Virus record (IMG/VR): IMGVR_UViG_3300006931_000029
Location: 160,955 to 224,954 of that record
Strand: one strand, 5' to 3'
Length of the DNA: 64,000 nucleotides
Both the position numbers and the translations under genes were made by a program. Positions within the stretch are counted from its first letter, which is position 1. Each line of letters opens with the position of its first letter. Positions 6,221 to 64,000 of this stretch are shown here, one piece after another. The notes under the pieces were generated by a model, which was given only the letters and a program-made list of their open reading frames with translations, had not been told where the DNA came from and ran no database searches.

Positions 6221-6258
6221 ATACAACCCACTTTATCTGAAAATGTAAACAAAAAAGT
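6221..6258 (-). promoter_or_regulatory. Sigma70-like early promoter cassette
   Basis: T-tract-GTTTACA-N17-TTGTAT-N6-ATG. Near-identical copies at 45228-45266 and 58594-58632. Confidence 0.75.
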
Positions 6259-19347: not shown

Positions 19348-20122
19348 GTCTGCGTAGAACGTAACCTGGATAGGTAAACGATTCCAGACTAAGTTATGTT
19401 TCGCTAATGTCTATCTCAACCTTGACCGTTCCGTCGGCACACTTAACCTCCATCAAACGGATCGTGCGACCTTGAAGAATGAGAATGACGAGAGTGGCAC
19501 GGCGATGGCGGTTAAAATCCCTTTCCCATGAACAGCCAGCCGATTCAACTAAGGCGCTGAGCGCTTCGTGAGCCATCGCCATCTCTTCTTTGGTAAAATC
19601 CAGTGAATCAGCCATCTTGCTCATGACGCAGATAACGTTCGAAACTTCTTCTCGTTTGCCAGTATCAACCGGAGTTTGGCCTGCGTTTCAAGATAGTGCT
19701 TGATGGTTGCAACCGTCCAACCGAAGACAGTCGCCTGTTCCCAGAGAGCCATCAAGATGTGCACGTGCTGGTTTGCATTGTGCACGGACATCCCTGAGCA
19801 GTAAAGGTTTACCTGCCGGAGAAGTTCGTTAGGATGCTCAAAGTAGTTGTCCACCTCACTCGGGTTCTTTGCGCTCTCTTCGTGCATCGTCAGACTTATC
19901 GGTAACTATCGGAGTGACCGCGATTCCATGCATGTCGATTAGCGCCACGCCATCGTCCACCATGAAGGCGTGGTCGTAGCCAGCTGCCTTCAACTTGTTA
20001 GCGATCTCGTCGAAGGCTGGTTTGCTGATCTCAAGTCTGGCGAAGGTGTGAGTGATCCTCAACATAGCGATGGACAGAACTTGGTCTGACGCGCTTGTAA
20101 ACAAAAACTTGTAGACAACGTG

Positions 20123-22057: not shown

Positions 22058-22095
22058 GGCTGTGTTTTAACCACTTCAGCTGCGTTTTGTAAACA

Positions 22096-22740
22096 TTATT
22101 TCCTCAGCCATCCGGTATGGTTCGGAGTCTGCCAGTTAGGAAGGTAGCCGATCTTCCTGAAGTGGTCGTGCACTGCCTTCTGGACTCCGGTGTAACCCCA
22201 ATCGTCGACGATCAAGATGCCGCCCGGTACCAGTTTGTCCCACAGATAGTCCATGGCCACAACCGTCGGGTCGTGCATGTCCATATCAAGGCGGAGCATT
22301 GCAATCGGACCTGGTTGATTGTCCGGCAACGGCAGAGTGTTCTGAATCCATCCCTCGACCAACCGGAACTGTTCGAATGGCAGGTTCAGCTCGATGATGT
22401 GGTTCTCGACGTCGGTTCGCCGGTGCGCCGTGATCCCACTCGACACGAGGAGGTCTTCAGGTAGTTCGCGATTCGGGTCGAGCTTGTCGCCGAATCCCGG
22501 CTGGTATTCGTCGTGGCGACCGGCCAGTTGAATGCCTTCGAAAGAATCGTAACCCCAAACCGTCTTCGTCTTGGCCGCGAGGTGCATTGCAATGATGGAT
22601 GAACCCATCGCGACGCCGCACTCAACCAAATCTCCTTCCAGGTTAGACGCTTCTTGTGCGAGACGATACGTCTCTTGAAGCGTGGATTCGAAACCGTAGA
22701 AACGGTGGAGGATTTTCTTGAGGATTTCCTGGTCGGTCAT
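22096..22740 (-). CDS. TylF/MycF/NovP-family O-methyltransferase
   Basis: EGDLVECGVAMG, WGYDSFEG, VEGWIQNTLP, IAMLRLDMDM, LVPGGILIVDDW. Confidence 0.9.
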   Translation of the reverse strand: MTDQEILKKILHRFYGFESTLQETYRLAQEASNLEGDLVECGVAMGSSIIAMHLAAKTKTVWGYDSFEGIQLAGRHDEYQPGFGDKLDPNRELPEDLLVSSGITAHRRTDVENHIIELNLPFEQFRLVEGWIQNTLPLPDNQPGPIAMLRLDMDMHDPTVVAMDYLWDKLVPGGILIVDDWGYTGVQKAVHDHFRKIGYLPNWQTPNHTGWLRK

Positions 22741-23797: not shown

Positions 23798-24490
23798 CGA
23801 GTCTTTCTTTTCCTGCCGGCGTGATCCAGTAGCCCATGCCGATCTTAGTGGCGTACTTCAAACTTTCCAGATGGACGCACGACTTTGGGTTGAACCTGTA
23901 GGACTTGCGGTTGAGGTTGTGAGCCCGCATGTCCGTCAACGCAAGCAACTGGCGAGTGGTCAATTGAGTGTTCATGGTAGGAGTTTCTCCACTTCATCTA
24001 TCCTACCGGCGTCTACGGCGTCTCGAGGAGAGCAACCTAAGTCAGGATGGACTGTGAACCACCACCTCATCGAAGGAATCCTCTTGCCCAAATCCAACAG
24101 GCGTTGAGCCATACCGTCGTCCATCGGCAGCGTGTTGCTGTTGGTATTCGTAACCACGTTCAGAAGAACTTAACCGCCGACGCCTAGCGGCGCGTTGCTT
24201 GGCACATTTGTCTTCGGCGCAAGCGTCGCAGAGTTTGCCGTGTCCGCCGATTGGCCCATAGTACCGTGCTGGTCGATAGCACCGGGGCTTGGAGCAATAG
24301 ACTTCCGGTTTATCGTGCAAAACTGACAGAACGAAACTGGTATGGGTGGTGGAAGTGGCATGACCAGCATGGATTGGTCGCAGCGACACTGCAGAATCTT
24401 TCCACCATTCAGCAATTTGCGTCCGAAGGGAATCATAAAACACGCACAGCCGATCTAGCTGGTCGACGGGCATTCACCCTCGTTAAGAAC

Positions 24491-24700
24491 ACCTGTCATC
24501 CCAAACCAGATCGGCTATGCGGCCCGTCACGCACGACGGGTTGTGGCCCTTTGGTTGCGCCAGTGTGCAGGGTATAGCGATGAGCTGCAGTCTCGTTCGC
24601 ATCTGCTCCTAAAGCCTGTCCAACCGGGACTTTTATGACTATGACAGGTTAACCCACCCGTCGATTCGAGGATGAACCGGGTTTCGCTAAACTGTGCCAG
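24491..24700 (-). ncRNA. Candidate structured non-coding RNA of about 210 nt
   Basis: Gap in the gene array bounded by GTTCT motifs, with a 9-bp closing helix ACCTGTCAT/ATGACAGGT and several internal hairpins. Confidence 0.45.
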
Positions 24701-25381
24701 AGAGAACGCTATTTGATCCTCCACGGCGGGCGACTGCGCAACGCGTGCAGCACATCAATTCCCATCCAGATAAAGCCGATGATGAGGCAAGCCCTCAGAA
24801 AGCCAGGTGTTGCAGTATCGAGCACGTAAAACGTGGCAGCTGCAATGCACATCGCAAGGATACCGCATAGAAACAACCAGAGAATCCACTCAGTCTTCAT
24901 CGTGGAGTATTTCTATGAAACGTTCCGCTCGTTCCTGTTCATCCATCACAAAGTTGACGAAGTCGTATGACTTTGTCGGCCACTCGAGAACCTGAGCCGA
25001 CGTCATCGACGAACCCTCAGGTGGTTTCATACACGACATCTTCCTGACAGACTTCATCGCCAAGCGGTCGTCGTCATCGACCCGCACATCGACGATGTCA
25101 AGCGCGTCTTCCTCAAGATCGTTGTAGATGCCGTTGTCGTCGCTGATCTCTGTTGCGCGACCCTCCTCGGGGTTCAAGAGCATCAAGTGACCTAGCGCGT
25201 CTCGGTAAACTGCTCCGCGGAAGGTCATCGTTTGCGATTGCGTAGATGCCAAATCAACGGCATGGCGGTTGCAAAGCCTAGCCACGGAATCCATATCAGT
25301 AACGCCCATGCGTGGAACGTAGTCACGAGACAGGCCAGCGCAAACGGTACCCACGCTGCAATCAGCATGCCGATGAAAGGA

Positions 25382-25843: not shown

Positions 25844-25854
25844 GTTGGTTAGAA

Positions 25855-26226
25855 CTAACCCTGTGACGGGTCTCCGTCCATGTCCAATATCCGAGTGGGA
25901 CGTGGGAATTCGGTGATGTAGAGATGCCGACCTACTTCCTTCGCCACGATTATCGGTCGTGCACCACCGACCGGATAGATGTCAAGGATATAGGAGCCGA
26001 AGTCCAACCATGAATGCTCCCATAGCTTCGACGGCACGTACCAGCCACGAACCACTGTGCCTTTGCCCGTCCACTCATGGAAAGTCTTCGCTGCGGTGTG
26101 GCAATCAGAGATTCCTTCCAGCATGTTCAACGCTGTCCACGCGTCAGCCAACAGCTCGTCGATCTCGGCCGGCGTACTCGGCAAGTCGCCAGAGACCTGA
26201 GCGTAAGGCGTGAACGTCGGTTTCAT
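25855..26226 (-). CDS. Putative transglutaminase/papain-like fold protein
   Basis: Candidate Cys-His-Asp triad: DCHTAA...EHSWL...ILDI. Confidence 0.45.
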   Translation of the reverse strand: MKPTFTPYAQVSGDLPSTPAEIDELLADAWTALNMLEGISDCHTAAKTFHEWTGKGTVVRGWYVPSKLWEHSWLDFGSYILDIYPVGGARPIIVAKEVGRHLYITEFPRPTRILDMDGDPSQG

Positions 26227-27701: not shown

Positions 27702-28172
27702 TTATGAAGCCTTGCGTGGACGGATGGTGACTTTTATGCCTTTCGATGCATAAAGTCTGTTGATCAAGTCATCGGCAACCCAATTCTGTTCACGAGGAAT
27801 CCACGTGAGAATCATCTCGGAACGCCACAGCTTTCTGCATTCCTCCCGCAGAGTGTAGAGAGCCGGCACGTTGCACTGCCATTTCTCGGTGAACTGGTTC
27901 ACGACCAGCTGTGAATCCATGAACAAGGCGATCGGCTGAGGCTTTGCGTTCTGCGAAAGCCATTGCAACGTGCCTCTCAACGCCCGCCACTCGGCAACGT
28001 TGTTCGTCATCCCGTTCCCGTTGCCAAGTATGAGAGCTGCCTGCTTCAGTGGCTTGGGTCGTGGATCGTCCTTACCGCCGGACACAGCGCCTTCGAAGGC
28101 TGCGAACGCGCACGCGCCGTATCCACCCGGATTGAATGGTTCACAAGCTCCATCGATGAAGACCGTAATCAT
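27702..28172 (-). CDS. rnhA: Ribonuclease HI family protein
   Basis: FIDGAC, TNNVAEWRAL, MDSQLVVNQ, WIPREQN.VAD (D-E-D-D catalytic residues). Confidence 0.85.
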   Translation of the reverse strand: MITVFIDGACEPFNPGGYGACAFAAFEGAVSGGKDDPRPKPLKQAALILGNGNGMTNNVAEWRALRGTLQWLSQNAKPQPIALFMDSQLVVNQFTEKWQCNVPALYTLREECRKLWRSEMILTWIPREQNWVADDLINRLYASKGIKVTIRPRKAS

Positions 28173-28753
28173 GCGACCGCCTTTTTCTTTTTAGCTTCGT
28201 CGATAGCTTGGATGCAGTGGTGAAAGTTGGATGAGTCGCACGAAGCCCGGCGGCTACCGTTGTCGTACGTGCCTGTGAAGTGTTCCTTGAGCCACGCCTC
28301 CACGAACTTGTGATTGACCATCCTGCTACAGGCGTCGTAGAAGCAAACGAGGAACCCGTCAATCTCCACCCACTGCACCTCGATGTTAACCGGTTGTCTG
28401 TAGACCTCGCCGACCCGAACCAACCAACCAGGGCTTATCTGCTTCCAGTCGTATGCACGTTCGCTGAGTGGGCCGAATCGCTTCACTGAGTCATCGATCC
28501 CTTTCAGGTACGACTTCGCCAGGCATAAGCCGGACGGGTTGTCTCGGTAGTTGCATTCGAGGAAGTCCACCATCTCCCTCAGGGCGTTAGTGTAACCGAA
28601 CCGTGCCTCCCTAGCATAGCGAGACCAGAACTGCTGCACCTCGTTACCCGTAGCTTCGACGATGAACAGCGTTTCTTTCAACCGTGTCTCGGCCGTATCA
28701 TTCGGCCGGTAGTTACGGTTCGGATACTCGGGAGCTGGAAGCGGATTGATCAT
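28169..28753 (-). CDS. Hypothetical protein
   Basis: Likely start MINPLP. FIVEAT...FYDACSRMV...SNFHHC. Confidence 0.6.
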   Translation of the reverse strand: MINPLPAPEYPNRNYRPNDTAETRLKETLFIVEATGNEVQQFWSRYAREARFGYTNALREMVDFLECNYRDNPSGLCLAKSYLKGIDDSVKRFGPLSERAYDWKQISPGWLVRVGEVYRQPVNIEVQWVEIDGFLVCFYDACSRMVNHKFVEAWLKEHFTGTYDNGSRRASCDSSNFHHCIQAIDEAKKKKAVA

Positions 28754-43526: not shown

Positions 43527-43562
43527 ATCCTACACTTCAGTTGTATTTTGTAAACAAAAAAG
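43527..43562 (-). promoter_or_regulatory. Sigma70-like early promoter
   Basis: TTTACA-N16-TAGGAT-N7-ATG(43519). Confidence 0.7.
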
Positions 43563-45227: not shown

Positions 45228-45293
45228 ATTCAACCCACTTTATTTGAAAATGTAAACAAAAAAGTGTACGGCTCCGCTACTTTATTTTTTACA
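45228..45293 (-). promoter_or_regulatory. Early promoter cassette with an inverted repeat
   Basis: TTTACA-N17-TTGAAT-N6-ATG(45221). 45251-45265 and 45279-45293 form a 13/15 inverted repeat. Confidence 0.75.
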
Positions 45294-49439: not shown

Positions 49440-49477
49440 ATCCTACACTTTGGTTGGAATTTGTAAACAAAAAAGTG
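49440..49477 (-). promoter_or_regulatory. Sigma70-like early promoter
   Basis: TTTACA-N16-TAGGAT-N6-ATG(49433). Confidence 0.7.
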
Positions 49478-53678: not shown

Positions 53679-54567
53679 CGTCTTTTGCTTCTGGGAGCTC
53701 TTCGACTATGGTTTGCAGAAGGTCTTGGTCTTGCTGTTGGCGTTGCTCCATCTCGCGCCACGCGGACATGTCTAGAAACTGCTTCACTCCGTTTTCAACC
53801 AGAGCTATAAGTGTCTTCGGCTCGAGAGCGTCTAGTTCCCAACTGCTATCGCCGAATTGTTCTCGGTATGCCGCGGCTCGGCTGTCATCCATCTTCACCG
53901 GGTTTTCTGGGAGTTGATGGCGCTGGACTTGGTCGTAATTCAACGCGAGTCGAACGACGTCAACTGGGCCGTCGCTGTAGCGCTCGAGTCTATCTCTTAC
54001 GTCACGAGACATGTCCAAACCGGACGGGTCGTGGTCACCCAAGTAGAGCACATGAACGTCTTTTCCTTCGACATCGCGCTGCGACTGAATGAACTTTCCT
54101 CGCGAGTACATCGATGACACGGACGAGTAACCTTTGTTGGCCGTAAAAGCAACTCCCCATTTTTCGCAGACCGGCGCCAGCACGCCTTCCAGGGCTTGCT
54201 TCTCAACCATGACCTCGACGTAATGCTGTTGCTGTTTCCACCGAGCTAAACGAAAATGTTCAGTCAAGTGCTGCAGATACGACTTGAGACTCTTATATTC
54301 CGGAATCGAGTGAGTCACGCGTCCGCGGTCTTCGATGGCGTCCCAATCTAGCATGCCGCCTTCTCTTGATTCAGAGATAACGGTAGCGAACGCTTCGTAG
54401 TTTTGCGGCGTATTTTTCATCCAGTTCTTCGCCACAAACTGGTAGTAAAGCTGGCGAACCGTAAGCTTGAAACCCTGTGAGAGATAGTCTTGGCACAAGC
54501 CGTCGGCTTTCGCGATAATGTCGATCGCTCGTTCACCAAACTTCTTCTCTCTGAAGCATTCTTTCAT
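53668..54567 (-). CDS. Toprim-domain protein (Topo VI-A/Spo11/DUF2399-like)
   Basis: LTVRQLYYQ, VEVMVEK, KGYSS, LYLGDHDPSGLDM, WELDAL. Confidence 0.75.
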   Translation of the reverse strand: MKECFREKKFGERAIDIIAKADGLCQDYLSQGFKLTVRQLYYQFVAKNWMKNTPQNYEAFATVISESREGGMLDWDAIEDRGRVTHSIPEYKSLKSYLQHLTEHFRLARWKQQQHYVEVMVEKQALEGVLAPVCEKWGVAFTANKGYSSVSSMYSRGKFIQSQRDVEGKDVHVLYLGDHDPSGLDMSRDVRDRLERYSDGPVDVVRLALNYDQVQRHQLPENPVKMDDSRAAAYREQFGDSSWELDALEPKTLIALVENGVKQFLDMSAWREMEQRQQQDQDLLQTIVEELPEAKDDES

Positions 54568-54577
54568 GGACGGGTTT

Positions 54578-54612
54578 AGGCTAGCGTTGTCCTTGAGTTT
54601 GTAAACAAAAAT
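54578..54612 (-). promoter_or_regulatory. Sigma70-like early promoter heading the Toprim-to-PurA-like operon
   Basis: TTTACA-N16-TAGCCT-N10-ATG(54567). Confidence 0.7.
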
Positions 54613-54615
54613 AAA

Positions 54616-55131
54616 TCACTTGCCGTACCACGCCGTGATCGGTCGTATTGCGAACGGAGCAGAGTGGCCATGCATCGGAATGTGACCCCAATCGCCGGTG
54701 TAGATTCGCCAACCTCTGTTGTTGCTCCCATCGTGGTCGCACCAGCCGTCCCAACCGTAATCGTGGCGTAGGCACGCGTAGGCGTCGTACGTTGCGGTGA
54801 GGCCATCCCTGGTTTCAGGAAGTGGCGGTGGAGTGACCTTGTCAGCGGCTTCCGAATTGAGGTAGTTGTAGACGAAAGCAGCAAGTTTTTGAGGATCGTA
54901 ACCCTCGCCAAACGGAAATCGTTGCGTCAACTTATCGTTGTGATCGATCGGATACTGATACAAGACAAGGCCGAGGTGAGGATCGATTCGATAGCCCGTG
55001 AAGCCTCCGTACCCTTCGCTCTTCTTCGCGTGAACCTGCGGCCACCGAAATTCTCTGCGGAAGATGAATTCGAGGATGCCGACCAGTTGAGCTTGGTTAT
55101 CGCCTGTGACGTTGAATCTGTGGTTGTCCAT
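54616..55131 (-). CDS. Hypothetical protein
   Basis: DHDGSNNRGWRIY...FAIRPITAWYGK. Confidence 0.65.
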   Translation of the reverse strand: MDNHRFNVTGDNQAQLVGILEFIFRREFRWPQVHAKKSEGYGGFTGYRIDPHLGLVLYQYPIDHNDKLTQRFPFGEGYDPQKLAAFVYNYLNSEAADKVTPPPLPETRDGLTATYDAYACLRHDYGWDGWCDHDGSNNRGWRIYTGDWGHIPMHGHSAPFAIRPITAWYGK

Positions 55132-55967
55132 TACTTCAGGGCAGTGTTGATTTTGATCTTCTTGCCGGCGCGACGGCCCTCGGCAACAGAGCCGAAATCG
55201 TCTAGATTTCCTTCACTGACTTTGAAGTATTTCAACCGAGGATGGTAACCCTTGACGGCTTGATCGACCTTCTCTTTTTCGCCGATCAAAATCATGGCGA
55301 CGGATTTGCCTGCATCAGCGTGCGACAGTTCGGCTTGCGCTTCGGCTTCGACTTTTCCCTTCTCGATGTCAAGCTTCTCATTGAGACCTTGGTAGACACC
55401 GTAGAAGAAGCTGTTACGGCTTGACATCGGTGCGTCGACGGCCTTCCGGTGTTTGTGCCAAAGGTCAATGAATTCGCGATGGAGAAAGCCGTAGACGTAG
55501 ATGGCAATGTGAACGTTGGTCTGTCGACCGATGAAGCTTAACGATTTCACGGTACCCGTCTTCTTGATTCCTTTGTCGACGTAGTCAGTCCAATCTGAAC
55601 ACTCGATGATCTTCACGCCGAAATACGACTTGAGAATCCACGTGATGAACTTATGACAGGATGGAAGTCTAGCTGCGCAAACTCCGCCTCCCTCGCGAGA
55701 AGGCCTGAACGGTTGCTGGACGATCGGCTCACCGGCTGACGTGTCCTCCGTCATGTCAATTGAGGCAAGGTCAATCCCGTGCTTCAGTGCAAGTCGTTGT
55801 GCGGCCATGAGCGCACCTTCGGCTTCGGCTTGTGTCGATCCTTTCGATGTCTCAGCTCGAGAAAGGAGCTTTTTGATCTTCTCGAGAATCTCGGTGTTCG
55901 CGACCGACATCGCCGGATGGTTCTCCGGTTTCAACCCTTCTGGTGCCTTCTCTGGTGCGTCGCTCAT
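55131..55967 (-). CDS. DUF2786 domain protein
   Basis: ILEKIKKLLSRA...EAEGALMAAQRLALKHGI. Confidence 0.8.
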   Translation of the reverse strand: MSDAPEKAPEGLKPENHPAMSVANTEILEKIKKLLSRAETSKGSTQAEAEGALMAAQRLALKHGIDLASIDMTEDTSAGEPIVQQPFRPSREGGGVCAARLPSCHKFITWILKSYFGVKIIECSDWTDYVDKGIKKTGTVKSLSFIGRQTNVHIAIYVYGFLHREFIDLWHKHRKAVDAPMSSRNSFFYGVYQGLNEKLDIEKGKVEAEAQAELSHADAGKSVAMILIGEKEKVDQAVKGYHPRLKYFKVSEGNLDDFGSVAEGRRAGKKIKINTALK

Positions 55968-56369
55968 TGTAGTCAAGAACTAGTCAGACCCCAGGATTCG
56001 TTATCTTGGGCGGCGTGATTTCGTTCAATTTGTTGAGAATTTTCCTGATAGCCAGTTGAATGCCCATTCCACGCTGGGCTTTGTCGAGTTCGAGAAACTG
56101 AGATTGCTCAGCTATCTTGGCCAGCGTGTCTAACTCTCGCCACGTGAGCTGGTTTTCGTTGTCCGGAAAAACACTGGACGCATTCACTATTCCGTAGAGA
56201 AATCCTCCAACTTGAGACGCGCGTTGACACACGCCGTCATAGTGTTTCTGCGAGCACTCAACTAGCAACTCAATCTCGTCAGGAGAAAAGGTAACCCACG
56301 CTTTTGGTTGAAAAGTGACAGACAAGAGATTCATTTCGGTGCAGGCCTCCTAGTCGGAGGGCTGTAGCG

Positions 56370-56401
56370 AAACCCGGCGAGGCCACACGCCCCGCCGGAT
56401 T
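56370..56401 (-). terminator. GC-rich hairpin terminator
   Basis: ATCCGGCGGGGC-GTGTG-GCCTCGCCGGGT-TT after the stop at 56412. The U-tract is short. Confidence 0.6.
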
Positions 56402-56411
56402 CCATGGCTGT

Positions 56412-57335
56412 TTAGTTGAGAAGCAGGTCGACGGCGGCCGTCTGCAGGCCAATACCGTAACCGATCATGTTGGTCTCGAAGCGGGATTCGGCAGCACGCT
56501 TAGCGCGAACCGGTTTCTCGTGCGAGAGGAACTGCGTGACCGCGTTTAACGCGTCGGCGCGGGTCTTACCCTCGTTGCCGATACCGTTGCGGAAGAGCTC
56601 GAACACCTTTGTGCGGGTGTTGGTGACACGTTTGCCTTCGCCGGGCATCCAAACCTCGACGAATTTCTTCGCGTCGCCTTCGGACATCTTGACGGACTGG
56701 AGTTGGTTGTAGACCTTCTGGAACTCCTGCGCATGCTTGTCGGCGAGACCGACGATGCGGTGAGCTTGTTCAATTTTGTCCTTGAAGTTTTTCGTGTGAC
56801 GGATAACGACCATCGATTTGGCCTCACCGAGGGCGGCCGACAGCGTGTTCATGCAAACCACGCGAGTGGAGACGAAGCGAACTGAAACCGGTTTGGTGCC
56901 GTCGTGACTGAGATAAACGAGGAAGTACTGCTTGAGTCCGTCGTTTTTGCCAGAGAGAAAGTACTCCTTCTTGAGGCTGGCGAGGAACCAAACGATCTTG
57001 CCGTTGCGGAGTGAACCGGCCGTCTCGTAGACTGCGTCGTCACCGATAACCGGATCGAGGATGTTGAGACCGTCGACGTTCTGGATCGGCGTGTAGCGGG
57101 TGCCCACGATTCCGAGGGGCTCGCCAGTGTCAGCGCGAACGATTCCGAAGTGGTCGGGGAAGGATTTGCCGTCAGCAACGCGGATGCGTTTCTTTGAAAC
57201 TTCCCAGTTCAGTTTGGCCTGAGCGAGAGCGGCTTCCGCCGTAAGAGCACCTTGGACAACGGTGCCGAGTTTGTGCCACGGGACGATACCGTTAGCAGAG
57301 ACCATGTGGTCATTTTCCTGGAGTTCGTGAGCCAT
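56412..57335 (-). CDS. DUF932/DUF945 family protein
   Basis: MAHEL, PWHKLG, YTPIQN, ETAGSLRNGK.VW, SHDGT, RVVCMNTL, IRHT. Confidence 0.9.
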   Translation of the reverse strand: MAHELQENDHMVSANGIVPWHKLGTVVQGALTAEAALAQAKLNWEVSKKRIRVADGKSFPDHFGIVRADTGEPLGIVGTRYTPIQNVDGLNILDPVIGDDAVYETAGSLRNGKIVWFLASLKKEYFLSGKNDGLKQYFLVYLSHDGTKPVSVRFVSTRVVCMNTLSAALGEAKSMVVIRHTKNFKDKIEQAHRIVGLADKHAQEFQKVYNQLQSVKMSEGDAKKFVEVWMPGEGKRVTNTRTKVFELFRNGIGNEGKTRADALNAVTQFLSHEKPVRAKRAAESRFETNMIGYGIGLQTAAVDLLLN

Positions 57336-57388
57336 ATTGATTCGAGTTTTTAACGTTTAACAGACTTGATTTGCTTTCAACGAAAGTA

Positions 57389-57425
57389 AGCCTAAACTTT
57401 CTTTCAGCAATGTAAACAAAAAAGT
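57389..57425 (-). promoter_or_regulatory. Sigma70-like early promoter
   Basis: TTTACA-N16-TAGGCT, followed by a leader of about 50 nt. Confidence 0.7.
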
Positions 57426-57606
57426 GCGAACTATTTTTCGGTATGTTCTTGGCTAGATTGGATTTCCCTGATTTCCGTGTCGTGGGTAAAATCAGCTCTA
57501 GCACAGGCCAGAAGCAACTTTACGATCATGAGAAGCACCAGACAGATGGCGAATAGGCCGAGAAAGTTGATGAACCTCTGTTCGCTAGGCGAGTATTCTC
57601 CGGGGC

Positions 57607-58128
57607 TCATGTTTCGTATGGAGCAATGCCGCCAGTGGTGTAGTAGCCGTTGACGTTGAGCATCATTCCTGATTTTGACTTTCTCGGTGTCGGCGTACGA
57701 CCAACGCTGAAGAGGAACTCGGCCACGAGTTGGCGACTGGACATTTCCTCGATGTCTGGATCACGGCGACCCATCAACACGGAAGCCACAGTGCAGAAAG
57801 CAGTGGCTTCATCATTGAAAGCAATTCCATCGCCTGAGCGATTAAAATTCTTCGCGTCAAATTTGAAACCGGAGGCTTCGAGGCGGTAGAGCGAATTGAG
57901 AAACCCGGTTGCCGACATGTCTTTGAGCTCGTTGAGCATCTTGACAAATTCCTCAGCGGCGTCGTTGCCCAATTCGGCGACAATTCCATCGTACACCATC
58001 TTGATGTGCTTCGGGCCAAGATCGCCACGGTTAACGCCGCGACCCGAGTAATACTCTGGACGAGCGGACAAGCGACCATCCGTGTGTTTGTGGATGATCG
58101 CGCGAACGGACATTTTTTCAGTTGACAT
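57607..58128 (-). CDS. Hypothetical protein
   Basis: 173-aa ORF tiling the array. Confidence 0.65.
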   Translation of the reverse strand: MSTEKMSVRAIIHKHTDGRLSARPEYYSGRGVNRGDLGPKHIKMVYDGIVAELGNDAAEEFVKMLNELKDMSATGFLNSLYRLEASGFKFDAKNFNRSGDGIAFNDEATAFCTVASVLMGRRDPDIEEMSSRQLVAEFLFSVGRTPTPRKSKSGMMLNVNGYYTTGGIAPYET

Positions 58129-58130
58129 GG

Positions 58131-58586
58131 TTAAACTCTAGTTGCGCATTCGGGTCCGAGACCCAGTTCGATACTCTCTGGAACAGTGAGCTTACGCCCA
58201 CAACGGCCGCAGCGACCCTCGTGCCACAATTCGCAGTTCGGAAGCTCCTGACCTGCGAGAACTCGCTCGACTACCCACCTAGCTGCCTTAGCGGATGGCG
58301 CGTCCGGCGTAATCTTCGATCGGACGCCGTGCGAGTAAGTCCCATTGGCGAAAATCGTGCCGACAAACTGGTATGAATGCTCGTTGTCCGAACCGTTAAG
58401 GACTGAGACGAAGTGCGGCGATTGAGCGGTCGGTTTGCGAACCTTCAGCGTGAATCGCGTCTGGGTTTTACCTGACCGGACCGTGAAAGTAGCGTTACCA
58501 GCGAGCAGAAACTGCTTTAAGTTTGCCGGAGCAACTTGAGCAGGAGCAGCGGGGTCCAGTCCAGGTAGGGAAGGAGTGTCAACCAT
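58131..58586 (-). CDS. DUF6011 domain protein
   Basis: LAGNATFT, HEGRCGRCGRKLTVPESIELGLGPECA. Confidence 0.85.
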   Translation of the reverse strand: MVDTPSLPGLDPAAPAQVAPANLKQFLLAGNATFTVRSGKTQTRFTLKVRKPTAQSPHFVSVLNGSDNEHSYQFVGTIFANGTYSHGVRSKITPDAPSAKAARWVVERVLAGQELPNCELWHEGRCGRCGRKLTVPESIELGLGPECATRV

Positions 58587-58593
58587 AAAAACC

Positions 58594-58632
58594 ATTCAAC
58601 CCACTTTGTTCTGAAATGTAAACAAAAAAGTG
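58594..58632 (-). promoter_or_regulatory. Early promoter cassette
   Basis: TTTACA-N17-TTGAAT-N7-ATG(58586). Confidence 0.75.
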
Positions 58633-58684
58633 TAGGTAATTTTAGGTGTCTTTCGGCTCAGCTGGAAGTAGGTTCTTCTAGACT

Positions 58685-59404
58685 ATGGCTGACTACCCGG
58701 AGCTTCTGGCACCCATTCCAGTTTCATTCCTTACCGACTTCGTCCGAGACTTTCAAAAGAACCGGCTAGATGGGCCGCTGTCTCAAGCAGCCAACGATTT
58801 AGTTCGAGACGTTCTATTTCGAGCTTCACTCGAAGACGCCGTTGAAACTAGGATCGAGCTCAATAACCGGATTCAACAGGAGGAAAGAGCGCCAACTGAC
58901 GAAGAATTGCGGCAAGAAGAGGCAGACAAGCATGCCGATCCAATTCTCGATGTCCTCGATAACGTGGTCGAGGGAATCCTCAAAGGCGAGAGTCTCGAAA
59001 AGCATCACGACCAAATTCGCAAGTACATCCTGAACCAGCAGGATCGGTCTGAGTTAATCGCCAATCTTCTTCTCACAAAGGACTACCGCCGACTCGTCTC
59101 CTTCGTGAAGGTTCGAGATGTCCTCGAACAACGGCTACTAGAGGCAGCGACAAGAGCGGATTTGAACATCTCCGAGATGATGGCGATGATGACGATCGTC
59201 AATGCAGGTGCCGACAAGCTGTCGAACAAGGTGGAAGCCGGAGCGTCCAACATCTCTGACGTAATTGCTCTCATGACGAAGGTTGACTACACGCTGCAGG
59301 AAAACGATTCGAAGATGAAAGAGAAATTGAAGAAGACGTCGCCTTCTGGACGAGAAATTGTTCGTCGCGTCATCCACAAGCTCAAGAAGGTTTCAGAGGA
59401 ATAG
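58685..59404 (+). CDS. Helical hypothetical protein
   Basis: 239-aa ORF with GTTCT 8 nt upstream. Confidence 0.7.
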   Translation: MADYPELLAPIPVSFLTDFVRDFQKNRLDGPLSQAANDLVRDVLFRASLEDAVETRIELNNRIQQEERAPTDEELRQEEADKHADPILDVLDNVVEGILKGESLEKHHDQIRKYILNQQDRSELIANLLLTKDYRRLVSFVKVRDVLEQRLLEAATRADLNISEMMAMMTIVNAGADKLSNKVEAGASNISDVIALMTKVDYTLQENDSKMKEKLKKTSPSGREIVRRVIHKLKKVSEE

Positions 59405-59666
59405 TCTTCCTCAGCGCCGTGAGTGCCGACGTAGGAGACATGAACAGGGTGCCGCCACGCTTACCTGGACGTCTCCATCTCCACTGGTAAATGGAATCGG
59501 CAGGATGCACCGGTTCGGGTGTCCATCCGGCTTTCTTTAGTTCAGCCGCCGTCTCTAGGTCGCCATCGTAGATGATTTTCGAGGCAGATGCTTGAAGCTG
59601 TTCGAAATAAGACTCCCGCTGGAGCGGCGTCATCTTCGCAATTTCCTTCCACGGTTTGTCCGGCAT
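59382..59666 (-). CDS. Hypothetical protein
   Basis: Start MPDKPW behind TTTACG-N16-TAAGCT-N5-ATG. Confidence 0.55.
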   Translation of the reverse strand: MPDKPWKEIAKMTPLQRESYFEQLQASASKIIYDGDLETAAELKKAGWTPEPVHPADSIYQWRWRRPGKRGGTLFMSPTSALTALRKTIPLKPS

Positions 59667-59727
59667 TCTCCAGCTTACCCCGCCTTGGAAAAACGTAAAC
59701 AAAAAATTTCCTCGGTAGATAGGCAAC

Positions 59728-60243
59728 ATGTCATTCCTGACAGAAGATCAGCTGGACAACCAGATCGACCTCCCAGTTTCCGCTCCCACGATTTTGATCG
59801 AACAGCAGAAATGGATCATCGTGTCTTCTATCAAGGTCGTTGACCCGATGCAGCTGAACCTACGCTGGCTTCAGATTCAGCTGGTTGAGGTTGTGAATCC
59901 GTTTACAGACGGAACCGTCACGGTCACTCCAAATGCCCAAGGGCTTTGCGTGTTTCCGCCGTCGGACATCATTCTGGACAACGCTGACTATGGCCTGGCG
60001 TATCTTGGTCTCTACCGAGGATTCTCACCTGCCGTCACTCCCCTTTCTCAGTCTTTGCAGGAACCGCCTCTGATCGTGGGTGGAGTAAATGCCACCGCAG
60101 CCGCCATCGCTGCCAGGAACGTCACGCCTACCGTTTATGCCACGGCCGGCGTCTACAGCTTTGTGCTGGTCAACAACACTCAGAACCGTCGGTTGAAGGT
60201 CACGGTCACAGGTCAAGCTCGCATGGTTCTCAACCCGGCATGA
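59728..60243 (+). CDS. Putative virion structural protein
   Basis: Beta-rich 171-aa protein, GTAGATAG upstream, directly before the large adhesin-like gene. Confidence 0.6.
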   Translation: MSFLTEDQLDNQIDLPVSAPTILIEQQKWIIVSSIKVVDPMQLNLRWLQIQLVEVVNPFTDGTVTVTPNAQGLCVFPPSDIILDNADYGLAYLGLYRGFSPAVTPLSQSLQEPPLIVGGVNATAAAIAARNVTPTVYATAGVYSFVLVNNTQNRRLKVTVTGQARMVLNPA

Positions 60244-60253
60244 CCACGGCTAA

Positions 60254-63200
60254 ATGGCGAATGAAATCTTCCCGAATTCGTCGCGTAGCCCTGCCGGTGT
60301 CATTGGGCTAGGTCAGCCGGTAACGCTGACGTGGGCGGCAACCGCTACTCTCGGAATCGCGTATCGAGAGGGTGCAATTACCAAGCCGAACGGGCAGGTG
60401 GTCAACCTCGCCCGCGTTTGGTATCCTGACGGTCCGCTCGGTCCTCAGTCGTTTACCGACACCGTCCTTGCTGGACTTTACAGCTGGCGGTCTCGTTACG
60501 CTGACATGTCGGTGCTGCAGGGCGCCGCCAACGGACTCACCGGCCAATACTACAACGGCACGGACTTGAATCCGGCTGAGTTGGTGTTCACGCGCACCGA
60601 CCCGAACATCAACTACAGTTTCCCGTCGAATTCGCCACCGGCACCTGGAATTGTCAGCGACCACTATTCGATGCGGTGGACAGGAACTATCATTCCGAGG
60701 TTCACGGGCAACTACACTTTCTCCACTCTGTCAGATGACGGCGTCCGTCTCTACGTCAACAACGCCAATTTGATCAACAATTGGACGGATCACGGCGCCA
60801 CTACCGACGTCGGTCCACCGATCTTCCTGCAGGCGAACGTCGCTGTTCCGATCGTCGTCGAGTTTTTCAACAACTTCGGCCCGGGTCTTCTTACCCTCTA
60901 CTGGCAGAGCGCAGCACAAAACTACGAGGTTGTTCCTCAAAGCCAACTACGCAACACCGGAAGCACGCCGCCAACGTACGGCACGGGCTACATCGATCAG
61001 GTTCTCACGTTTCAAGTTGGAGGTCTCACCCAAGCGAGCGTCGCGATTGCTCCAACCACGCCGACGGTACAGATTGGCGCTACCGTCAACTTCACGGCTA
61101 GCGGCGGAACAGGAACAGGACTCTTCAACTGGGGTGGCGAAGCGTCTGGAGTTGGCACGACAAAATCGGTTCAGTTCAACTCTGTTGGCACGTTTCAAGT
61201 TACGGTCTATCGGGCAGGCGACAACACGTACAATCAGTCGAACACGGCCACGTCGACCATCACTGTGGTGAAGGCGAATCAGGCGACACTAGTTGCCTCC
61301 CCAGCAAACACGACTGTTGCTGTCGGAACTATCGTAACGCTGACAGCGAATGGTGGAACAGGAACAGGCCAGTACCAGTGGGGAGGAGCAGTAAGTCTCA
61401 CGACATCGCTGAACTCCATTCAATTCCAAGTTCCGGCAGCTGGTTTGTCTCAAATCACGTGCGTGAAGTTGGGCGATGCCACGCTCAATAATTCGAACCA
61501 AATCACGTTCAACGTCACAGGTGTCAAGTCGTCTCAAGCGGCAGTTACTGTGTCGCCAACGCCAATCAACGTTGAGCCGGGAACAACAGTTATGTTCACG
61601 GCCGCCGGCGGTTCAGGAACAGGCCAGTACCAGTGGGGTGGAGACGCGAGTGGAACGGGTAGCACAAAGCAGGTCACCTTCAATACGGCAGGAAGCAGAA
61701 CCGTCACCGTAGTTCGGCTAGCTGACGCGGCGTACAACCAGTCGAACACGGCGACCGCAGCTGTCACCGTTCAAGTCCACGTTATCACGCCAAACTCCAG
61801 CAGAACCCCTGCTACGAGACCGGTTGGATCGCCGTTCACGTTGACATGGGCAGCGACAGCTACGCTAGGAATTGCGTATCGAGAAGGTTCAATCCTTCAA
61901 GCGGACAGCAGCGTTGTCTCTCTTGCTCGGGTCAATTCGTTTGAGCCTGGAATGCTTGGTCCGCAGTCTTTCCTGCCAACAGGAGGAAAGGGCGTCTACA
62001 CGTGGACTTCCAAGTACGCAGACCAATCCATCAACACCGGTCCGCCATTCACGGGTGGCACCGGGTTTGTGGAGCAACAGCTCACCTTCACCGTCACAGG
62101 ACTAAGCCAGTCGACGGTGGTTATTTCCCCGTCGACTGTCGGAGCCACGCTCGGTGATGAAATCACGTTCACAGCATCAGGAGGATCAGGAACCGGAGAC
62201 TACCAGTGGGGCAGCGATGCAAGTGGAACCGGTAGTTCAAAAGCTGTTACGTTCAACACTCCAGGTGTTAGAACGGTCACGGTCAAGAAACTTGGAGATT
62301 CAACCTATGCAGATTCGAATCTAGCCATCGCGACTATTACTGTCACGAAGCTTGTTCAAGCTGTTGTCACGATCTCTCCTAGTTCGATTGACGTCGAACC
62401 AGGTACCCTCGTCACTTTCACAGCTTCAGGCGGGTCTGGCACTGGAGACTACCAGTGGAGTGGAGACGCTAGCGGAACAGGAACGACGAAGGACGTCACG
62501 TTCAACGTCGGAGGCTCTCGCGTTGTCAACGTTAAACGACTCGGAGATTCGACGTATCAAGATTCCAATTTTGCCCAAGCGTCGATCGACGTTGCAGTTC
62601 ACATCATCACGCCGAATTCGTCGAGGACGCCGTCTCCAGCTTCATTTGGTCAACCGGTTACGCTGAAGTGGAATGCCACAGCAACGCTAGACATTTACTT
62701 TAGAGAAGGAAGCATCGTCAAGCCGGATGGAAACACCGTTGCCCTCAATCGGGTTTATTACAACGAGGCGGGAATGCTCGGCTTTCAATCGTTCACAGAT
62801 ACGGCCCAACGCGGCACGTATACCTGGACATCTCGTTACGCCGACTTCTCGATCATCAATCCTCCGCTGACGTATGGTGTCGGGTTTAAGGACCAAATCC
62901 TCACGTTTTTCGTCAACGGTATCAATCAAGCCGCTCTCTCGCTTACGCCAGGGACGATCAACACTTTCGTCGGGAATACGGCTGTCTTCACCGCGTCGGG
63001 AGGATCGGGAACAGGACTCTATCACTGGAGACTTTTCTATCATCAGACGAGTTCCACGGTGACAATTGACACGACCGACCCTGAGCTCATTCTCACGAAC
63101 GTGGCGTTAGGGACCGTCGACGTATGGGTCACTAAGGTCACCGATCTCACGTACAATTCTTCGAATGAGGCTGGACCTTCGCACCTCGTTGTTGTGAAGG

Positions 63201-64000
63201 CAACTCAGACGACTGTCACTATCGCTCCGACTGCCGTCACCGTGGAGATTGGAAGCTCGGTCACGTTCAACGCCGTTGGCGGCAGCGGAACGGGGCAATA
63301 TCTTTGGGGAGGAAAAGCGTCCGGCAATGGGTCGTCAAAGGTTGTTCACTTCGCACAACTAGGCACGTTTCAGGTTACAGTGTTGAAGTTGGGAGACACG
63401 CTGTTCAACAACTCGAATACGGCCACAGCGACCGTTATCGTGACGGCAATCCTGCCTCCGACAGTCACGATCTTTGCTTTCCCTGCTGAAGGCTCTGCTC
63501 CATTTTCCACGACAATCACGTGGTCGTCTGAGAATGCCGTCGGAGTAACAGTGAGTGGTCCTGGTCTTTCGTCGACAGCACAAAATGGAAGCGAACTAGT
63601 TTCAGGTCTAGGCACTGGCGTCAAAATCTACACGATTCACGCAACAAACGCGGGTGGGACGACTTCTGCTAGCGTTCAAGTCACAATCGATCTTACCCCT
63701 GTTGAGACTACAGGATTCACGGTTCATTTCACCGATCAAACGGTGCTTCGGGCGGACACATGGCTTTGGGATTTTGGTGACGGTTCGTCAACGTCAACGG
63801 TTCGAAATCCCATTCACACCTACAACGATCTAGGTGTCTTTCTAGTCACGTTGACCGTCACGTGCGATGGTCAAACTGACGTTAAGCAAAAACTGATTTC
63901 GATTGGTTGCAATCCTAGCGATCCTTTCCCATTTACTCCGGACTGGAACACGCTCGTCAACGAGGAAGACTACGATCCTTTCAACGACCCCCGTTACGTC
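60254..64000 (+). CDS. Large Ig-repeat / PA14 / PKD virion surface protein, partial
   Basis: Omitted from the ORF track (no stop in the window). MANEIFPNSSRSP...; PA14 (NGLTGQYYNG...SMRWTG...SDDGVRLYVN); 7 FTASGGxGTG-type repeats; PKD (WLWDFGDG...NPIHTY). In frame at both ends. Confidence 0.85.
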   Translation, partial: MANEIFPNSSRSPAGVIGLGQPVTLTWAATATLGIAYREGAITKPNGQVVNLARVWYPDGPLGPQSFTDTVLAGLYSWRSRYADMSVLQGAANGLTGQYYNGTDLNPAELVFTRTDPNINYSFPSNSPPAPGIVSDHYSMRWTGTIIPRFTGNYTFSTLSDDGVRLYVNNANLINNWTDHGATTDVGPPIFLQANVAVPIVVEFFNNFGPGLLTLYWQSAAQNYEVVPQSQLRNTGSTPPTYGTGYIDQVLTFQVGGLTQASVAIAPTTPTVQIGATVNFTASGGTGTGLFNWGGEASGVGTTKSVQFNSVGTFQVTVYRAGDNTYNQSNTATSTITVVKANQATLVASPANTTVAVGTIVTLTANGGTGTGQYQWGGAVSLTTSLNSIQFQVPAAGLSQITCVKLGDATLNNSNQITFNVTGVKSSQAAVTVSPTPINVEPGTTVMFTAAGGSGTGQYQWGGDASGTGSTKQVTFNTAGSRTVTVVRLADAAYNQSNTATAAVTVQVHVITPNSSRTPATRPVGSPFTLTWAATATLGIAYREGSILQADSSVVSLARVNSFEPGMLGPQSFLPTGGKGVYTWTSKYADQSINTGPPFTGGTGFVEQQLTFTVTGLSQSTVVISPSTVGATLGDEITFTASGGSGTGDYQWGSDASGTGSSKAVTFNTPGVRTVTVKKLGDSTYADSNLAIATITVTKLVQAVVTISPSSIDVEPGTLVTFTASGGSGTGDYQWSGDASGTGTTKDVTFNVGGSRVVNVKRLGDSTYQDSNFAQASIDVAVHIITPNSSRTPSPASFGQPVTLKWNATATLDIYFREGSIVKPDGNTVALNRVYYNEAGMLGFQSFTDTAQRGTYTWTSRYADFSIINPPLTYGVGFKDQILTFFVNGINQAALSLTPGTINTFVGNTAVFTASGGSGTGLYHWRLFYHQTSSTVTIDTTDPELILTNVALGTVDVWVTKVTDLTYNSSNEAGPSHLVVVKATQTTVTIAPTAVTVEIGSSVTFNAVGGSGTGQYLWGGKASGNGSSKVVHFAQLGTFQVTVLKLGDTLFNNSNTATATVIVTAILPPTVTIFAFPAEGSAPFSTTITWSSENAVGVTVSGPGLSSTAQNGSELVSGLGTGVKIYTIHATNAGGTTSASVQVTIDLTPVETTGFTVHFTDQTVLRADTWLWDFGDGSSTSTVRNPIHTYNDLGVFLVTLTVTCDGQTDVKQKLISIGCNPSDPFPFTPDWNTLVNEEDYDPFNDPRYV

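What the first reader, a model, noticed from the sequence alone, without database searches (positions are those of the whole stretch)
24486..24707. Structured RNA candidate of about 210 nt with its own promoter motif and mutually exclusive helices
Seen: a gap in an otherwise wall-to-wall gene array, starting after a GTTCT motif (24703-24707) and ending at the next one (24486-24490). Possible minus-strand pairings are ACCTGTCAT (24641-24649) with ATGACAGGT (24491-24499) or with the nearer GACAGG (24615-24620). ACCCGTCG (24534-24541) can pair with the local GACGGG (24523-24528) or with the 5' CGACGGGT (24656-24663). ATGCG/CGCAT, CAGAT/ATCTG, CCCT/AGGG and TGG/CCA helices form a multi-branch core. 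The only same-strand ORF (24527-24724) looks spurious. Inference: a stand-alone small RNA or two-state switch of a family I do not recognise.
Basis: partly seen in the sequence, partly recalled or inferred. Interest (0 to 1): 0.65.

Follow-up and report, generated by a model that had tools for sequence, protein, structure and literature searches.

The report
Conserved non-coding phage leader with hairpin
A roughly 320-base stretch between two small genes of a 225-kb soil phage encodes no protein yet is far better conserved than its neighbours. It ends in one very stable RNA hairpin that buries a gene-start signal, so it is most likely a control region in the messenger RNA, not the free-standing multi-branch switch RNA first proposed.

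Summary
The gap is real and non-coding. Against the only other lineage found (L002), 24437-24708 differs at 4.8% of sites and has four 1-nt indels. Flanking genes differ at 14-48% of third codon positions. The low-divergence block runs from 24754, inside the 3' end of the upstream 63-aa gene, to the ATG at 24436.

Seven GACRGG/CCYGTC hexamers lie within 200 nt (0.18 expected), a cluster unique in the genome.

The proposed fold fails. L002 substitutions break the ATGCG/CGCAT and CAGAT/ATCTG helices and weaken ACCTGTCAT/ATGACAGGT. The long-range helices cost 9-18 kcal/mol.

The one exceptional structure is an 80-nt hairpin at 24443-24521 (-47.6 kcal/mol, z -6.7). It encloses GTTCT-N12-ATG.

GTTCT is a genome-wide gene-start motif, 6-12 nt upstream of start codons, in a phage that shows no Shine-Dalgarno signal. 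It is not shown to be a promoter.

There is no Rfam match, no further homologue and no RNA reads.

Best reading: a cis-acting mRNA leader controlling the small overlapping genes downstream (confidence about 0.4).

The parts
24437..24754 (-). Conserved block. The non-coding part is 24437-24708; the rest is the last 45 nt of the upstream 63-aa gene, whose synonymous sites are also frozen.
   Evidence: Window versus L002: 13 differences in 272 sites (4.8%) plus four 1-nt indels. Third codon positions of flanking genes differ at 14-48%. The last 43 nt of the 63-aa gene differ at 1 of 14 third positions, against 48% earlier in that gene. The whole block folds with z -3.08 on the minus strand and -1.81 on the plus strand.
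24443..24521 (-). Long irregular hairpin of 31 base pairs with an 11-nt loop, UUAACGAGGGU. It is the only thermodynamically exceptional structure in the element.
   Evidence: -47.6 kcal/mol and z -6.72 on the minus strand; -33.7 kcal/mol and z -5.42 on the plus strand. L002 keeps the same architecture at -39.1 kcal/mol, z -5.87. It is among the 3 most stable of 21,418 84-nt windows in the genome. Pair counts: 25 pairs invariant, 3 changed on one side and kept, 3 broken, 0 compensatory.
24486..24490 (-). GTTCT gene-start motif. Its GUUC is paired with GAAU in the hairpin's inner stem.
   Evidence: Its pairing probability is 0.81, in the most stable local context of all start-linked GTTCT copies.
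24471..24473 (-). AUG 12 nt downstream of GTTCT, inside the hairpin stem. It opens a 143-codon mixed-frame ORF in the window and a 13-codon uORF in L002, whose UGA stop overlaps the X1 AUG.
   Evidence: A 1-nt indel (alignment A1, column 499) changes the frame between the two lineages.
24703..24707 (-). GTTCT one base after the stop codon of the 63-aa gene. No ATG, GTG or TTG follows within 6-12 nt in either lineage.
24465..24662 (-). Cluster of seven GACRGG/CCYGUC hexamers, numbered 5' to 3' on the minus strand: 1 = 24657-24662, 2 = 24643-24648, 3 = 24615-24620, 4 = 24535-24540, 5 = 24523-24528, 6 = 24492-24497, 7 = 24465-24470. They pair locally as 1-2, 4-5 and 6-7, leaving hexamer 3 unpaired; long-range combinations are also possible.
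   Evidence: 7 observed against 0.18 expected, unique in 225 kb. Six of the seven are kept in L002; the copy at 24492-24497 is not.
24523..24540 (-). Small hairpin CCCGUC-GUGCGU-GACGGG.
   Evidence: Pair probability 0.99 in the window and 0.98 in L002. It is invariant, so it gives no covariation information.
24642..24662 (-). Candidate hairpin GACGGGU-GGGUUA-ACCUGUC.
   Evidence: Present in the minimum-energy fold of the 235-nt and 272-nt spans and of L002. It is replaced by another pairing in the 331-nt window fold. It is invariant between lineages.
24709..24900 (-). Upstream 63-aa hydrophobic protein gene.
   Evidence: Third-position substitution pattern. Called as a gene in every related contig. 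Only two protein variants are on record.
24170..24436 (-). X1, a small Cys-rich ORF. Only its first 45 or so codons show coding constraint. Its ATG marks the 3' end of the conserved block.
   Evidence: 11 of 15 differences in 24302-24436 fall on third positions of this frame. The N-terminal 42 residues differ at one position.
24042..24320 (-). X2, an overlapping ORF in another frame with a TTG start 7 nt after GTTCT (24328-24332). It has a Cys-rich N-terminal part and a basic tail.
   Evidence: 18 of 26 differences in 24174-24320 fall on third positions of this frame.
23972..24157 (-). X3, a 61-aa ORF with a GTG start (ATG in L002) 7 nt after GTTCT (24165-24169).

Best explanation
The stretch is a cis-acting, non-coding part of a polycistronic sense (minus-strand) phage mRNA. 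It is a roughly 270-nt leader lying between the 63-aa gene and the small overlapping Cys-rich genes X1, X2 and X3. Its working part is an 80-nt, 31-bp hairpin directly upstream of the X1 start. The hairpin locks a GTTCT-N12-AUG start signal into its stem.

Inferred mechanism: the hairpin sets how much X1-X3 is made. It could do so by occluding the start signal, by acting as a double-strand-specific (RNase III-type) processing site that creates a new 5' end next to the X1 AUG, or by both. The upstream GACRGG/CCYGUC modules would serve as auxiliary hairpins or as binding sites for a protein.

Shown: non-coding status, strong sequence constraint, the hairpin and its sense-strand bias, and the gene-start association of GTTCT. 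Inferred: transcription through the element, the regulatory effect, and any processing or protein binding.
For: 1. Not coding. There are four 1-nt indels between the two lineages, no ORF is shared, and coding scores are negative.
2. Constraint. Divergence is 4.8%, against 14-48% at neighbouring third codon positions. The run of third-position substitutions resumes at codon 5 of X1, so the block ends at the X1 ATG.
3. Hairpin. It scores -47.6 kcal/mol, z -6.7, and is among the top 3 of 21,418 genomic windows. L002 keeps the same architecture (z -5.9) despite 8 changes. Three of those changes switch between G-U and Watson-Crick pairs, and one mismatch moves by two positions.
4. Sense-strand RNA. 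The hairpin has six G-U pairs and is 14 kcal/mol more stable on the minus strand than on the plus strand. The same holds for the whole block.
5. Context. GTTCT lies 6-12 nt upstream of 47 start codons (9.8% of copies, against 2.9% for permuted 5-mers). It occurs in 9.1% of gene upstream regions against 1.0% of controls. Shine-Dalgarno words are not enriched. The hairpin therefore buries what this phage uses as a start signal.
6. No TGTTTAC promoter motif (the core of this phage's promoter consensus) lies between 27681 and 22095, so the element sits inside a transcription unit.
Against: - There is no direct evidence of transcription. No RNA run holds the element.
- Only two lineages exist, so there is not a single compensatory double change, and three hairpin pairs are broken in L002.
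- The 190 nt upstream of the hairpin are the best conserved part, with 2 differences in 120 nt. They have no significant predicted structure, so the hairpin model leaves most of the constraint unexplained.
- The uORF arrangement around the buried AUG differs between the two lineages.
- X1 has no GTTCT at the usual spacing, and how it is translated is unknown.
- Divergence varies among neighbouring genes (third positions 14-48%). Part of the low divergence could therefore reflect a recombination tract.
Confidence: 0.4

Rival explanations
1. A stand-alone small RNA of about 250-270 nt. It would start a few bases after GTTCT at 24703-24707, end at the big hairpin followed by GUGUUUUAU, and act in trans or as a multi-state switch.
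For: - Strong constraint over the whole stretch, including parts with no cis role that can be named.
- GTTCT follows the upstream stop codon by one base with no start codon after it. If GTTCT is a -10-like element of leaderless transcripts, an RNA would start there.
- A stable 3' hairpin followed by a short U run was flagged as terminator-like.
- Dense, mutually complementary hexamers.
Against: - GTTCT carries only 5 conserved bases with no flanking conservation, and 432 of its 479 copies are not at gene starts. That fits a ribosome-binding-type signal better than a promoter.
- No TGTTTAC promoter motif lies nearby.
- The hairpin is unlike the phage's clear intrinsic terminators, which are perfect GC stems followed directly by a U-tract.
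- Fold energy outside the hairpin is no better than random.
- The alternative helices cost 9-18 kcal/mol and are eroded in L002.
- No Rfam family matches and no paralogue exists.
Confidence: 0.2
2. A DNA-level regulatory region. It would be an internal promoter/operator array in which the GACRGG repeats, in both orientations, bind a regulator. The regulator could be the Cys-rich, basic X1 or X2 proteins encoded just downstream, acting in autoregulation.
For: - Seven copies of one hexamer in both orientations within 200 bp, unique in the genome.
- Six of the seven copies are conserved.
- The adjacent genes encode small proteins with paired cysteines and an arginine-rich stretch.
- The central 190 nt are conserved without predicted RNA structure.
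Against: - Constraint is nearly uniform over 270 nt, not confined to the hexamers.
- Hexamer spacings (14, 28, 80, 12, 31 and 27 nt) and polarities are irregular.
- The hairpin depends on six G-U pairs, which are mismatches in DNA, and it is 14 kcal/mol weaker on the other strand.
- No sigma-70-like promoter and no TGTTTAC motif lies in the region.
- X1 and X2 match no DNA-binding family.
Confidence: 0.2
3. No function of its own. The low divergence would reflect a recent recombination tract between the two phage lineages, and the hairpin and repeats would be incidental.
For: - Divergence along the 2.2-kb alignment is patchy: third positions differ at 14% in the 70-aa gene and 48% in the 63-aa gene.
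- The low-divergence tract starts inside the upstream gene.
Against: - The tract ends at the X1 start codon.
- 4 of its 17 events are indels, as expected for non-coding sequence under selection and not for a fresh identical tract.
- Its divergence is still 3 times lower than the lowest synonymous divergence nearby.
- The hexamer cluster and the hairpin are each extreme outliers in the genome.
Confidence: 0.1
4. It encodes a small peptide, for example the 39-codon ORF 24483-24602 that follows AGGAG.
For: An ATG preceded by AGGAG. The first 17 codons are nearly identical in both lineages.
Against: - A 1-nt deletion in L002 changes the frame after codon 17 and gives a different, shorter tail.
- The coding score is negative.
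- Shine-Dalgarno words are not used upstream of this phage's genes.
- There is no codon periodicity among the substitutions.
Confidence: 0.03

Closest known systems
Phage mRNA leaders and intergenic hairpins that are RNase III sites and gate translation, such as the lambda N leader and the T7 early/late R sites (from general knowledge, not tested here)
   Same: A long, imperfect double-stranded hairpin of more than two helical turns lies between genes of a polycistronic phage transcript. It sits directly upstream of a start codon and encloses initiation signals.
   Different: No cleavage or processing data exist. There is no sequence similarity. The host is unknown. The buried signal is GTTCT, not a Shine-Dalgarno sequence. 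About 190 conserved nucleotides upstream have no counterpart in those sites.
Transcription attenuators and riboswitch expression platforms, which use mutually exclusive helices
   Same: Several segments can pair in more than one way (GACRGG with CCYGUC). A stable 3' hairpin is followed by a few U residues upstream of a gene.
   Different: No Rfam riboswitch or leader matches. The alternatives are 9-18 kcal/mol worse than the ground state. The U run is short and offset from the stem. One alternative helix is eroded in the sister lineage.
Phage translational operators bound by a phage protein, such as T4 RegA or gene 32 and the MS2 coat operator (from general knowledge)
   Same: RNA structure at a start site, next to genes for small, possibly nucleic-acid-binding proteins. 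Repeated modules could be binding sites.
   Different: No binding protein has been identified. X1 and X2 match no family. The element is several times longer than known operators.
Phage-encoded small or large non-coding RNAs in Rfam, such as GOLLD, ROOL and phage sRNAs
   Same: A conserved non-coding stretch in a large phage that also carries tRNAs and a tmRNA.
   Different: No match to any of the 4227 Rfam models, even at E up to 10. There is a single copy, and it is not next to the tRNA array.

Membership tests
Any Rfam 15 family | Score at or above the family's gathering threshold | tested here: not met
   The whole window gave 0 hits at gathering thresholds. In 24300-24800 at E up to 10, only chance-level hits to eukaryotic or archaeal miRNA and snoRNA models appeared, at 11-18 bits against thresholds of 38-149 bits.
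Structured non-coding RNA (generic) | Fold energy better than dinucleotide shuffles | tested here: inconclusive
Central part z -0.1. Whole block z -3.08. Hairpin alone z -6.7. Only the hairpin carries the signal.
Structured non-coding RNA (generic) | Compensatory base-pair changes among homologues | tested here: inconclusive
   Only two distinct sequences exist. There are 0 double changes, 3 one-sided changes that keep the pair, and 3 broken pairs.
Riboswitch or attenuator two-state switch | Alternative folds of comparable energy, both under selection | tested here: not met
   The forced long-range helices cost +17.8 and +9.4 kcal/mol and cross each other. L002 changes weaken ACCTGTCAT/ATGACAGGT while the local helix keeps 11 of 12 pairs.
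Riboswitch or attenuator two-state switch | Intrinsic terminator: a GC-rich stem directly followed by a U-tract | tested here: inconclusive
   The scan flags a weak 5-bp version. Four U residues start 3-4 nt after the stem. The phage's clear terminators look different.
Stand-alone sRNA gene | Own promoter | tested here: inconclusive
   No sigma-70-like site and no TGTTTAC motif between 27681 and 22095. GTTCT is present, but it behaves as a start-codon-linked 5-mer.
Stand-alone sRNA gene | A discrete transcript | not testable with these tools
   No RNA run holds the element. The four runs laid had no contig on 24441-24668.
RNase III-type processing hairpin | About 20 bp or more of mostly continuous double-stranded RNA in an intergenic position | tested here: met
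   31 pairs, with 18 continuous at the base. The hairpin lies between the 63-aa gene and X1.
RNase III-type processing hairpin | Cleavage in vivo or in vitro | not testable with these tools
   No raw RNA reads are available.
Protein-coding gene | An ORF conserved in frame, with substitutions mostly at third positions | tested here: not met

The most novel reading that the evidence does not exclude
The element is a new family of phage RNA that serves as an internal ribosome-entry or processing platform. This phage shows no Shine-Dalgarno signal upstream of its genes, and its TGTTTACA promoters place a -10-like hexamer only 6-7 nt before the start codon, which implies leaderless first genes. A gene that follows a 270-nt untranslated gap would then need a dedicated structured RNA to be expressed. 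The RNA would be built from repeated GACRGG/CCYGUC hairpin modules and a terminal long hairpin, possibly read by the adjacent Cys-rich proteins. Alternatively, the same RNA is released as a stable trans-acting molecule.
Probability: 0.12. Interest if true: 0.65.

Novelty: new member of a known kind. Interest (0 to 1): 0.35.

Why it matters
If the hairpin controls the genes downstream, it is a clean test case for how a large phage with no Shine-Dalgarno signal upstream of its genes expresses internal genes. Together with the GTTCT start motif, it would give handles for annotating such phages. Standard gene callers left 730 bases here empty in every contig, missing three small genes. The element is confined to two closely related soil-phage lineages, and its function cannot be established from sequence alone.

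Tried and rejected
- GenBank phages. Blastn of 1 kb and 8 kb around the element gave no homologue of the element.
- IMG/VR. Protein-seeded scans with three neighbouring genes and a 24-mer scan gave nothing, except a distant 171-kb phage (L006) that lacks the element.
- Protein word searches with the 154-aa, 63-aa and 70-aa neighbours. Only two lineages exist among 5.8 billion proteins. All window-type contigs are 100% identical.
- Metagenome pattern scan. It returned only the two known lineages plus one chance match inside an unrelated coding region (L013/L014).
- Two pattern scans of 185,579 bacterial and archaeal genomes returned nothing.
- The genome search 'relatives' is not available for a virus record.
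- Sequencing runs. No RNA holder was found. The four low-share runs laid had no contig on the element, which says nothing either way.
- Covariance model of the 3' part. It found only itself in the genome and nothing in the L006 record.
- Weak similarity of 24656-24697 to 28646-28689, inside a gene. nhmmer gave E 0.013, and the local alignment scored 37 against 33 for the next best genomic chunk, so it is not significant.
- RNA polymerase genes that could explain a phage-specific promoter. No Pfam hits; the T7-type model had no positive control.
- Pairing of GTTCT in general. Start-linked copies are no more and no less paired than other copies (0.61 against 0.60).
- Pfam, PHROGs and Atlas look-ups of X1, X2, X3 and neighbours gave nothing informative.
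- Literature search for GTTCT as a phage promoter gave nothing relevant.
- The first genome-wide fold scan timed out and was repeated with a coarser step.

Full report
**Setting**

The window is the last 64 kb of a 224,954-bp IMG/VR phage record with direct terminal repeats. Genes run almost entirely on the minus strand. The phage comes from rhizosphere and soil metagenomes. Most genes around the finding are orphans.

**Check of the observation**

On the minus strand, GTTCT lies at 24703-24707, one base after the TAG of a 63-aa gene (24709-24900), and again at 24486-24490.

They are not a chance pattern. They are copies of one hexamer, GACRGG, and its complement, CCYGTC. Seven copies lie between 24465 and 24662, where 0.18 per 200 nt is expected. 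No other 250-nt window of the 225-kb genome has more than four.

For 24474-24708 on the minus strand, the energy is -73.5 kcal/mol against -76.5 ± 5.0 for shuffles, so z is +0.59. The plus strand gives z -1.15.

**Related sequences and coding status**

Word searches with the flanking proteins, followed by contig look-ups, found only two lineages in all collections.
- The window type occurs in at least five further contigs, all 100% identical.
- A second type is L002, which is identical to L003 and L011.

A metagenome pattern scan added only a chance hit. Two scans of bacterial genomes, four scans of IMG/VR and two of GenBank phages added nothing.

The window-L002 alignment is informative.
- Flanking genes differ at 14-48% of third codon positions and at 3-16% of first and second positions.
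- 24437-24708 differs at 13 of 272 sites (4.8%).
- That stretch has four 1-nt indels and no codon periodicity.
- The 65-aa ORF 24527-24724 stops after 33 codons in L002.
- The 39-aa ORF 24483-24602 changes frame after codon 17 in L002.
- Both ORFs have negative hexamer coding scores.

The stretch is therefore non-coding and under constraint comparable to non-synonymous sites.

The low-divergence tract begins at about 24754, inside the 63-aa gene. The last 14 third positions of that gene carry one change, against 48% earlier in the gene. The tract ends at the ATG at 24436, and third-position substitutions resume at codon 5.

**What lies downstream**

Its hexamer score is negative. A 1-nt indel just after its ATG shifts it in L002. 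Substitutions follow three different frames:
- X1 from ATG 24436, constrained only over about 45 codons;
- X2 from TTG 24320, in another frame;
- X3 from GTG 24157, which is ATG in L002.

X2 and X3 each start exactly 7 nt after a GTTCT. X1 and X2 are rich in paired cysteines, and X2 has an arginine run. None of the three matches a known family. Gene callers left the whole 730 nt empty in every contig.

**Structure**

Extending the 3' border by 45 nt reveals a long hairpin at 24443-24521.
- It has 31 pairs and an 11-nt loop.
- It scores -47.6 kcal/mol with z -6.7.
- It is among the three most stable of 21,418 84-nt windows of the genome.
- L002 has the same architecture at -39.1 kcal/mol, z -5.9.
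- It contains six G-U pairs and is 14 kcal/mol weaker on the plus strand. This points to selection on the sense-strand RNA and not on a DNA palindrome.

Eight L002 changes fall within the hairpin. Three interconvert G-U and Watson-Crick pairs, one repairs a mismatch, three break pairs and one adds a bulge. None is a compensatory double change. With two sequences, covariation cannot prove the structure.

The hairpin encloses GTTCT (24486-24490; its GUUC pairs with GAAU) and the AUG at 24473 in its inner stem.

The rest of the element (24521-24708 or 24521-24754) has z about -0.1. The small CCCGUC/GACGGG hairpin at 24523-24540 is predicted with probability 0.98-0.99 in both lineages, but it is invariant.

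- 24518 A>T breaks ATGCG/CGCAT.
- 24507 G>A breaks CAGAT/ATCTG, while it improves a G-U pair to A-U in the hairpin.
- Four changes at 24491-24495 leave ACCTGTCAT/ATGACAGGT with two mismatches and two wobbles. The competing local helix keeps 11 of 12 pairs.
- Forcing the two long-range helices costs +17.8 and +9.4 kcal/mol.
- The two long-range helices cross each other.

A two-state switch is therefore not excluded, but nothing measured supports it.

**The GTTCT motif**

Window-wide, GTTCT is not over-represented: 131 copies against 156 expected. Its placement, however, is special.
- 47 of 479 genomic copies lie 6-12 nt upstream of an ATG, GTG or TTG that opens at least 50 codons. That is 9.8%, against 2.9% for permuted 5-mers, and the highest absolute count of any 5-mer.
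- 9.1% of genes carry it at -20 to -4, against 1.0% of control positions.
- GGAG, GAGG and AGGA are not enriched at all.
- It has no conserved flanks.

The phage's evident promoter is different. It is a T-tract, then TGTTTACA, then a 16-17-nt spacer and a TAnnnT- or TTGAAT-like hexamer that ends 6-7 nt before the start codon. This implies leaderless first genes. There are 22 copies in the window against 4.7 expected, and 20 of them are on the gene strand. None lies between 27681 and 22095, so the element sits inside a transcription unit.

GTTCT is thus a gene-start signal. It could be a ribosome-binding-type signal or a minimal -10-like box. It is not a demonstrated promoter. The copy at 24703-24707 has no start codon behind it in either lineage.

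**Interpretation**

The best-supported reading is a cis-acting leader within the sense mRNA (confidence about 0.4). Its terminal hairpin would gate expression or processing of X1-X3.

The rivals are:
- a stand-alone RNA (0.2);
- a DNA-level operator or promoter array that uses the hexamers (0.2);
- a recombination tract with no function (0.1);
- a small peptide (0.03).

The main weakness of every RNA model is that the most conserved 190 nt have no significant predicted fold. The main weakness of the DNA model is the G-U-dependent, strand-asymmetric hairpin and the uniform constraint.

No RNA data exist. No listed run is on record as RNA, and the four runs laid had no contig over the element.

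**Comparison and novelty**

Nothing in Rfam 15 matches. There is no paralogue in the genome and no copy in the distant relative L006.

In kind, the element resembles phage mRNA leaders and intergenic RNase III-type hairpins, or translational operators. It shares with them the long imperfect duplex at a start site, but no sequence and no tested activity. I rate it a new member of a known kind, with modest interest.

The more unusual observations are by-products. They are the GTTCT start motif in a phage with no Shine-Dalgarno signal and apparently leaderless first genes, the three overlapping small genes, and the phage's atypical tRNA set.

Noticed in passing
Whole window and genome; examples at window 25851-25855, 24165-24169, 24328-24332, 19356-19360 and 55976-55980: GTTCT is a start-linked motif. 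47 of 479 genomic copies lie 6-12 nt upstream of a start codon, and it has no conserved flanks. Shine-Dalgarno words are not enriched upstream of genes at all. Whether it binds the ribosome, acts as a minimal -10 box of leaderless mRNAs or marks an RNA processing site is open.
   Followed up: partly
Window, 22 sites, for example 58618-58624, 49463-49469, 45252-45258, 43550-43556, 6245-6251 and 22089-22095: Strong promoter-like consensus: TTTTT-TGTTTACA, a 16-17-nt spacer, then TTGAAT, TAGGAT or TATGGT ending 6-7 nt before the start codon. This implies leaderless mRNAs. There are 22 copies against 4.7 expected, and 20 are on the gene strand.
   Followed up: partly
Window 23972-24436, minus strand: Three small overlapping genes (X1 from ATG 24436, X2 from TTG 24320, X3 from GTG 24157) are revealed by codon-position substitution patterns. 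X1 and X2 each have a constrained Cys-rich N-terminal part and an apparently unconstrained tail that overlaps the next gene (the 61-aa X3 is not Cys-rich and has no such tail). No gene caller found them in any contig. A frameshift that joins X1 and X2 into one zinc-finger-like protein is not excluded.
   Followed up: partly
Same genome, outside the window: G000 54,365-62,830, 132,581-132,656 and 133,813-133,908: 38 tRNA genes, 36 of them in one array together with a tmRNA gene (tag GNTIVKAFARSNELRLAA). 37 of the 38 tRNAs end in an encoded CCA. 29 of 38 have a T-loop reading G-U-G-C-R-A, with G at position 55 in place of the near-universal U. Many of their D-loops appear to lack the usual GG, which looks like co-variation of the G18-U55 tertiary pair.
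   Followed up: partly
Window 60254-64000, plus strand: A large open frame of more than 1,248 aa that runs off the window end, with PA14 and PKD domains. It is probably a virion surface or adhesion protein.
   Followed up: no
Window 27702-28172 and 22096-22740, minus strand: An RNase H-like protein (RVT_3/RNase_H) and a TylF-type O-methyltransferase lie in the same transcription unit as the element.
   Followed up: no
Same genome, outside the window: G000 about 154,044-154,070: A palindrome, AGAAC-NN-GTTCT, lies between two divergent genes. Each gene starts 7-8 nt after its own GTTCT.
   Followed up: no
Window 28646-28689, minus strand: A 41-nt stretch inside a 290-aa gene resembles 24656-24697 of the element (30 of 41 identical). 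It scores barely above the genomic background.
   Followed up: yes
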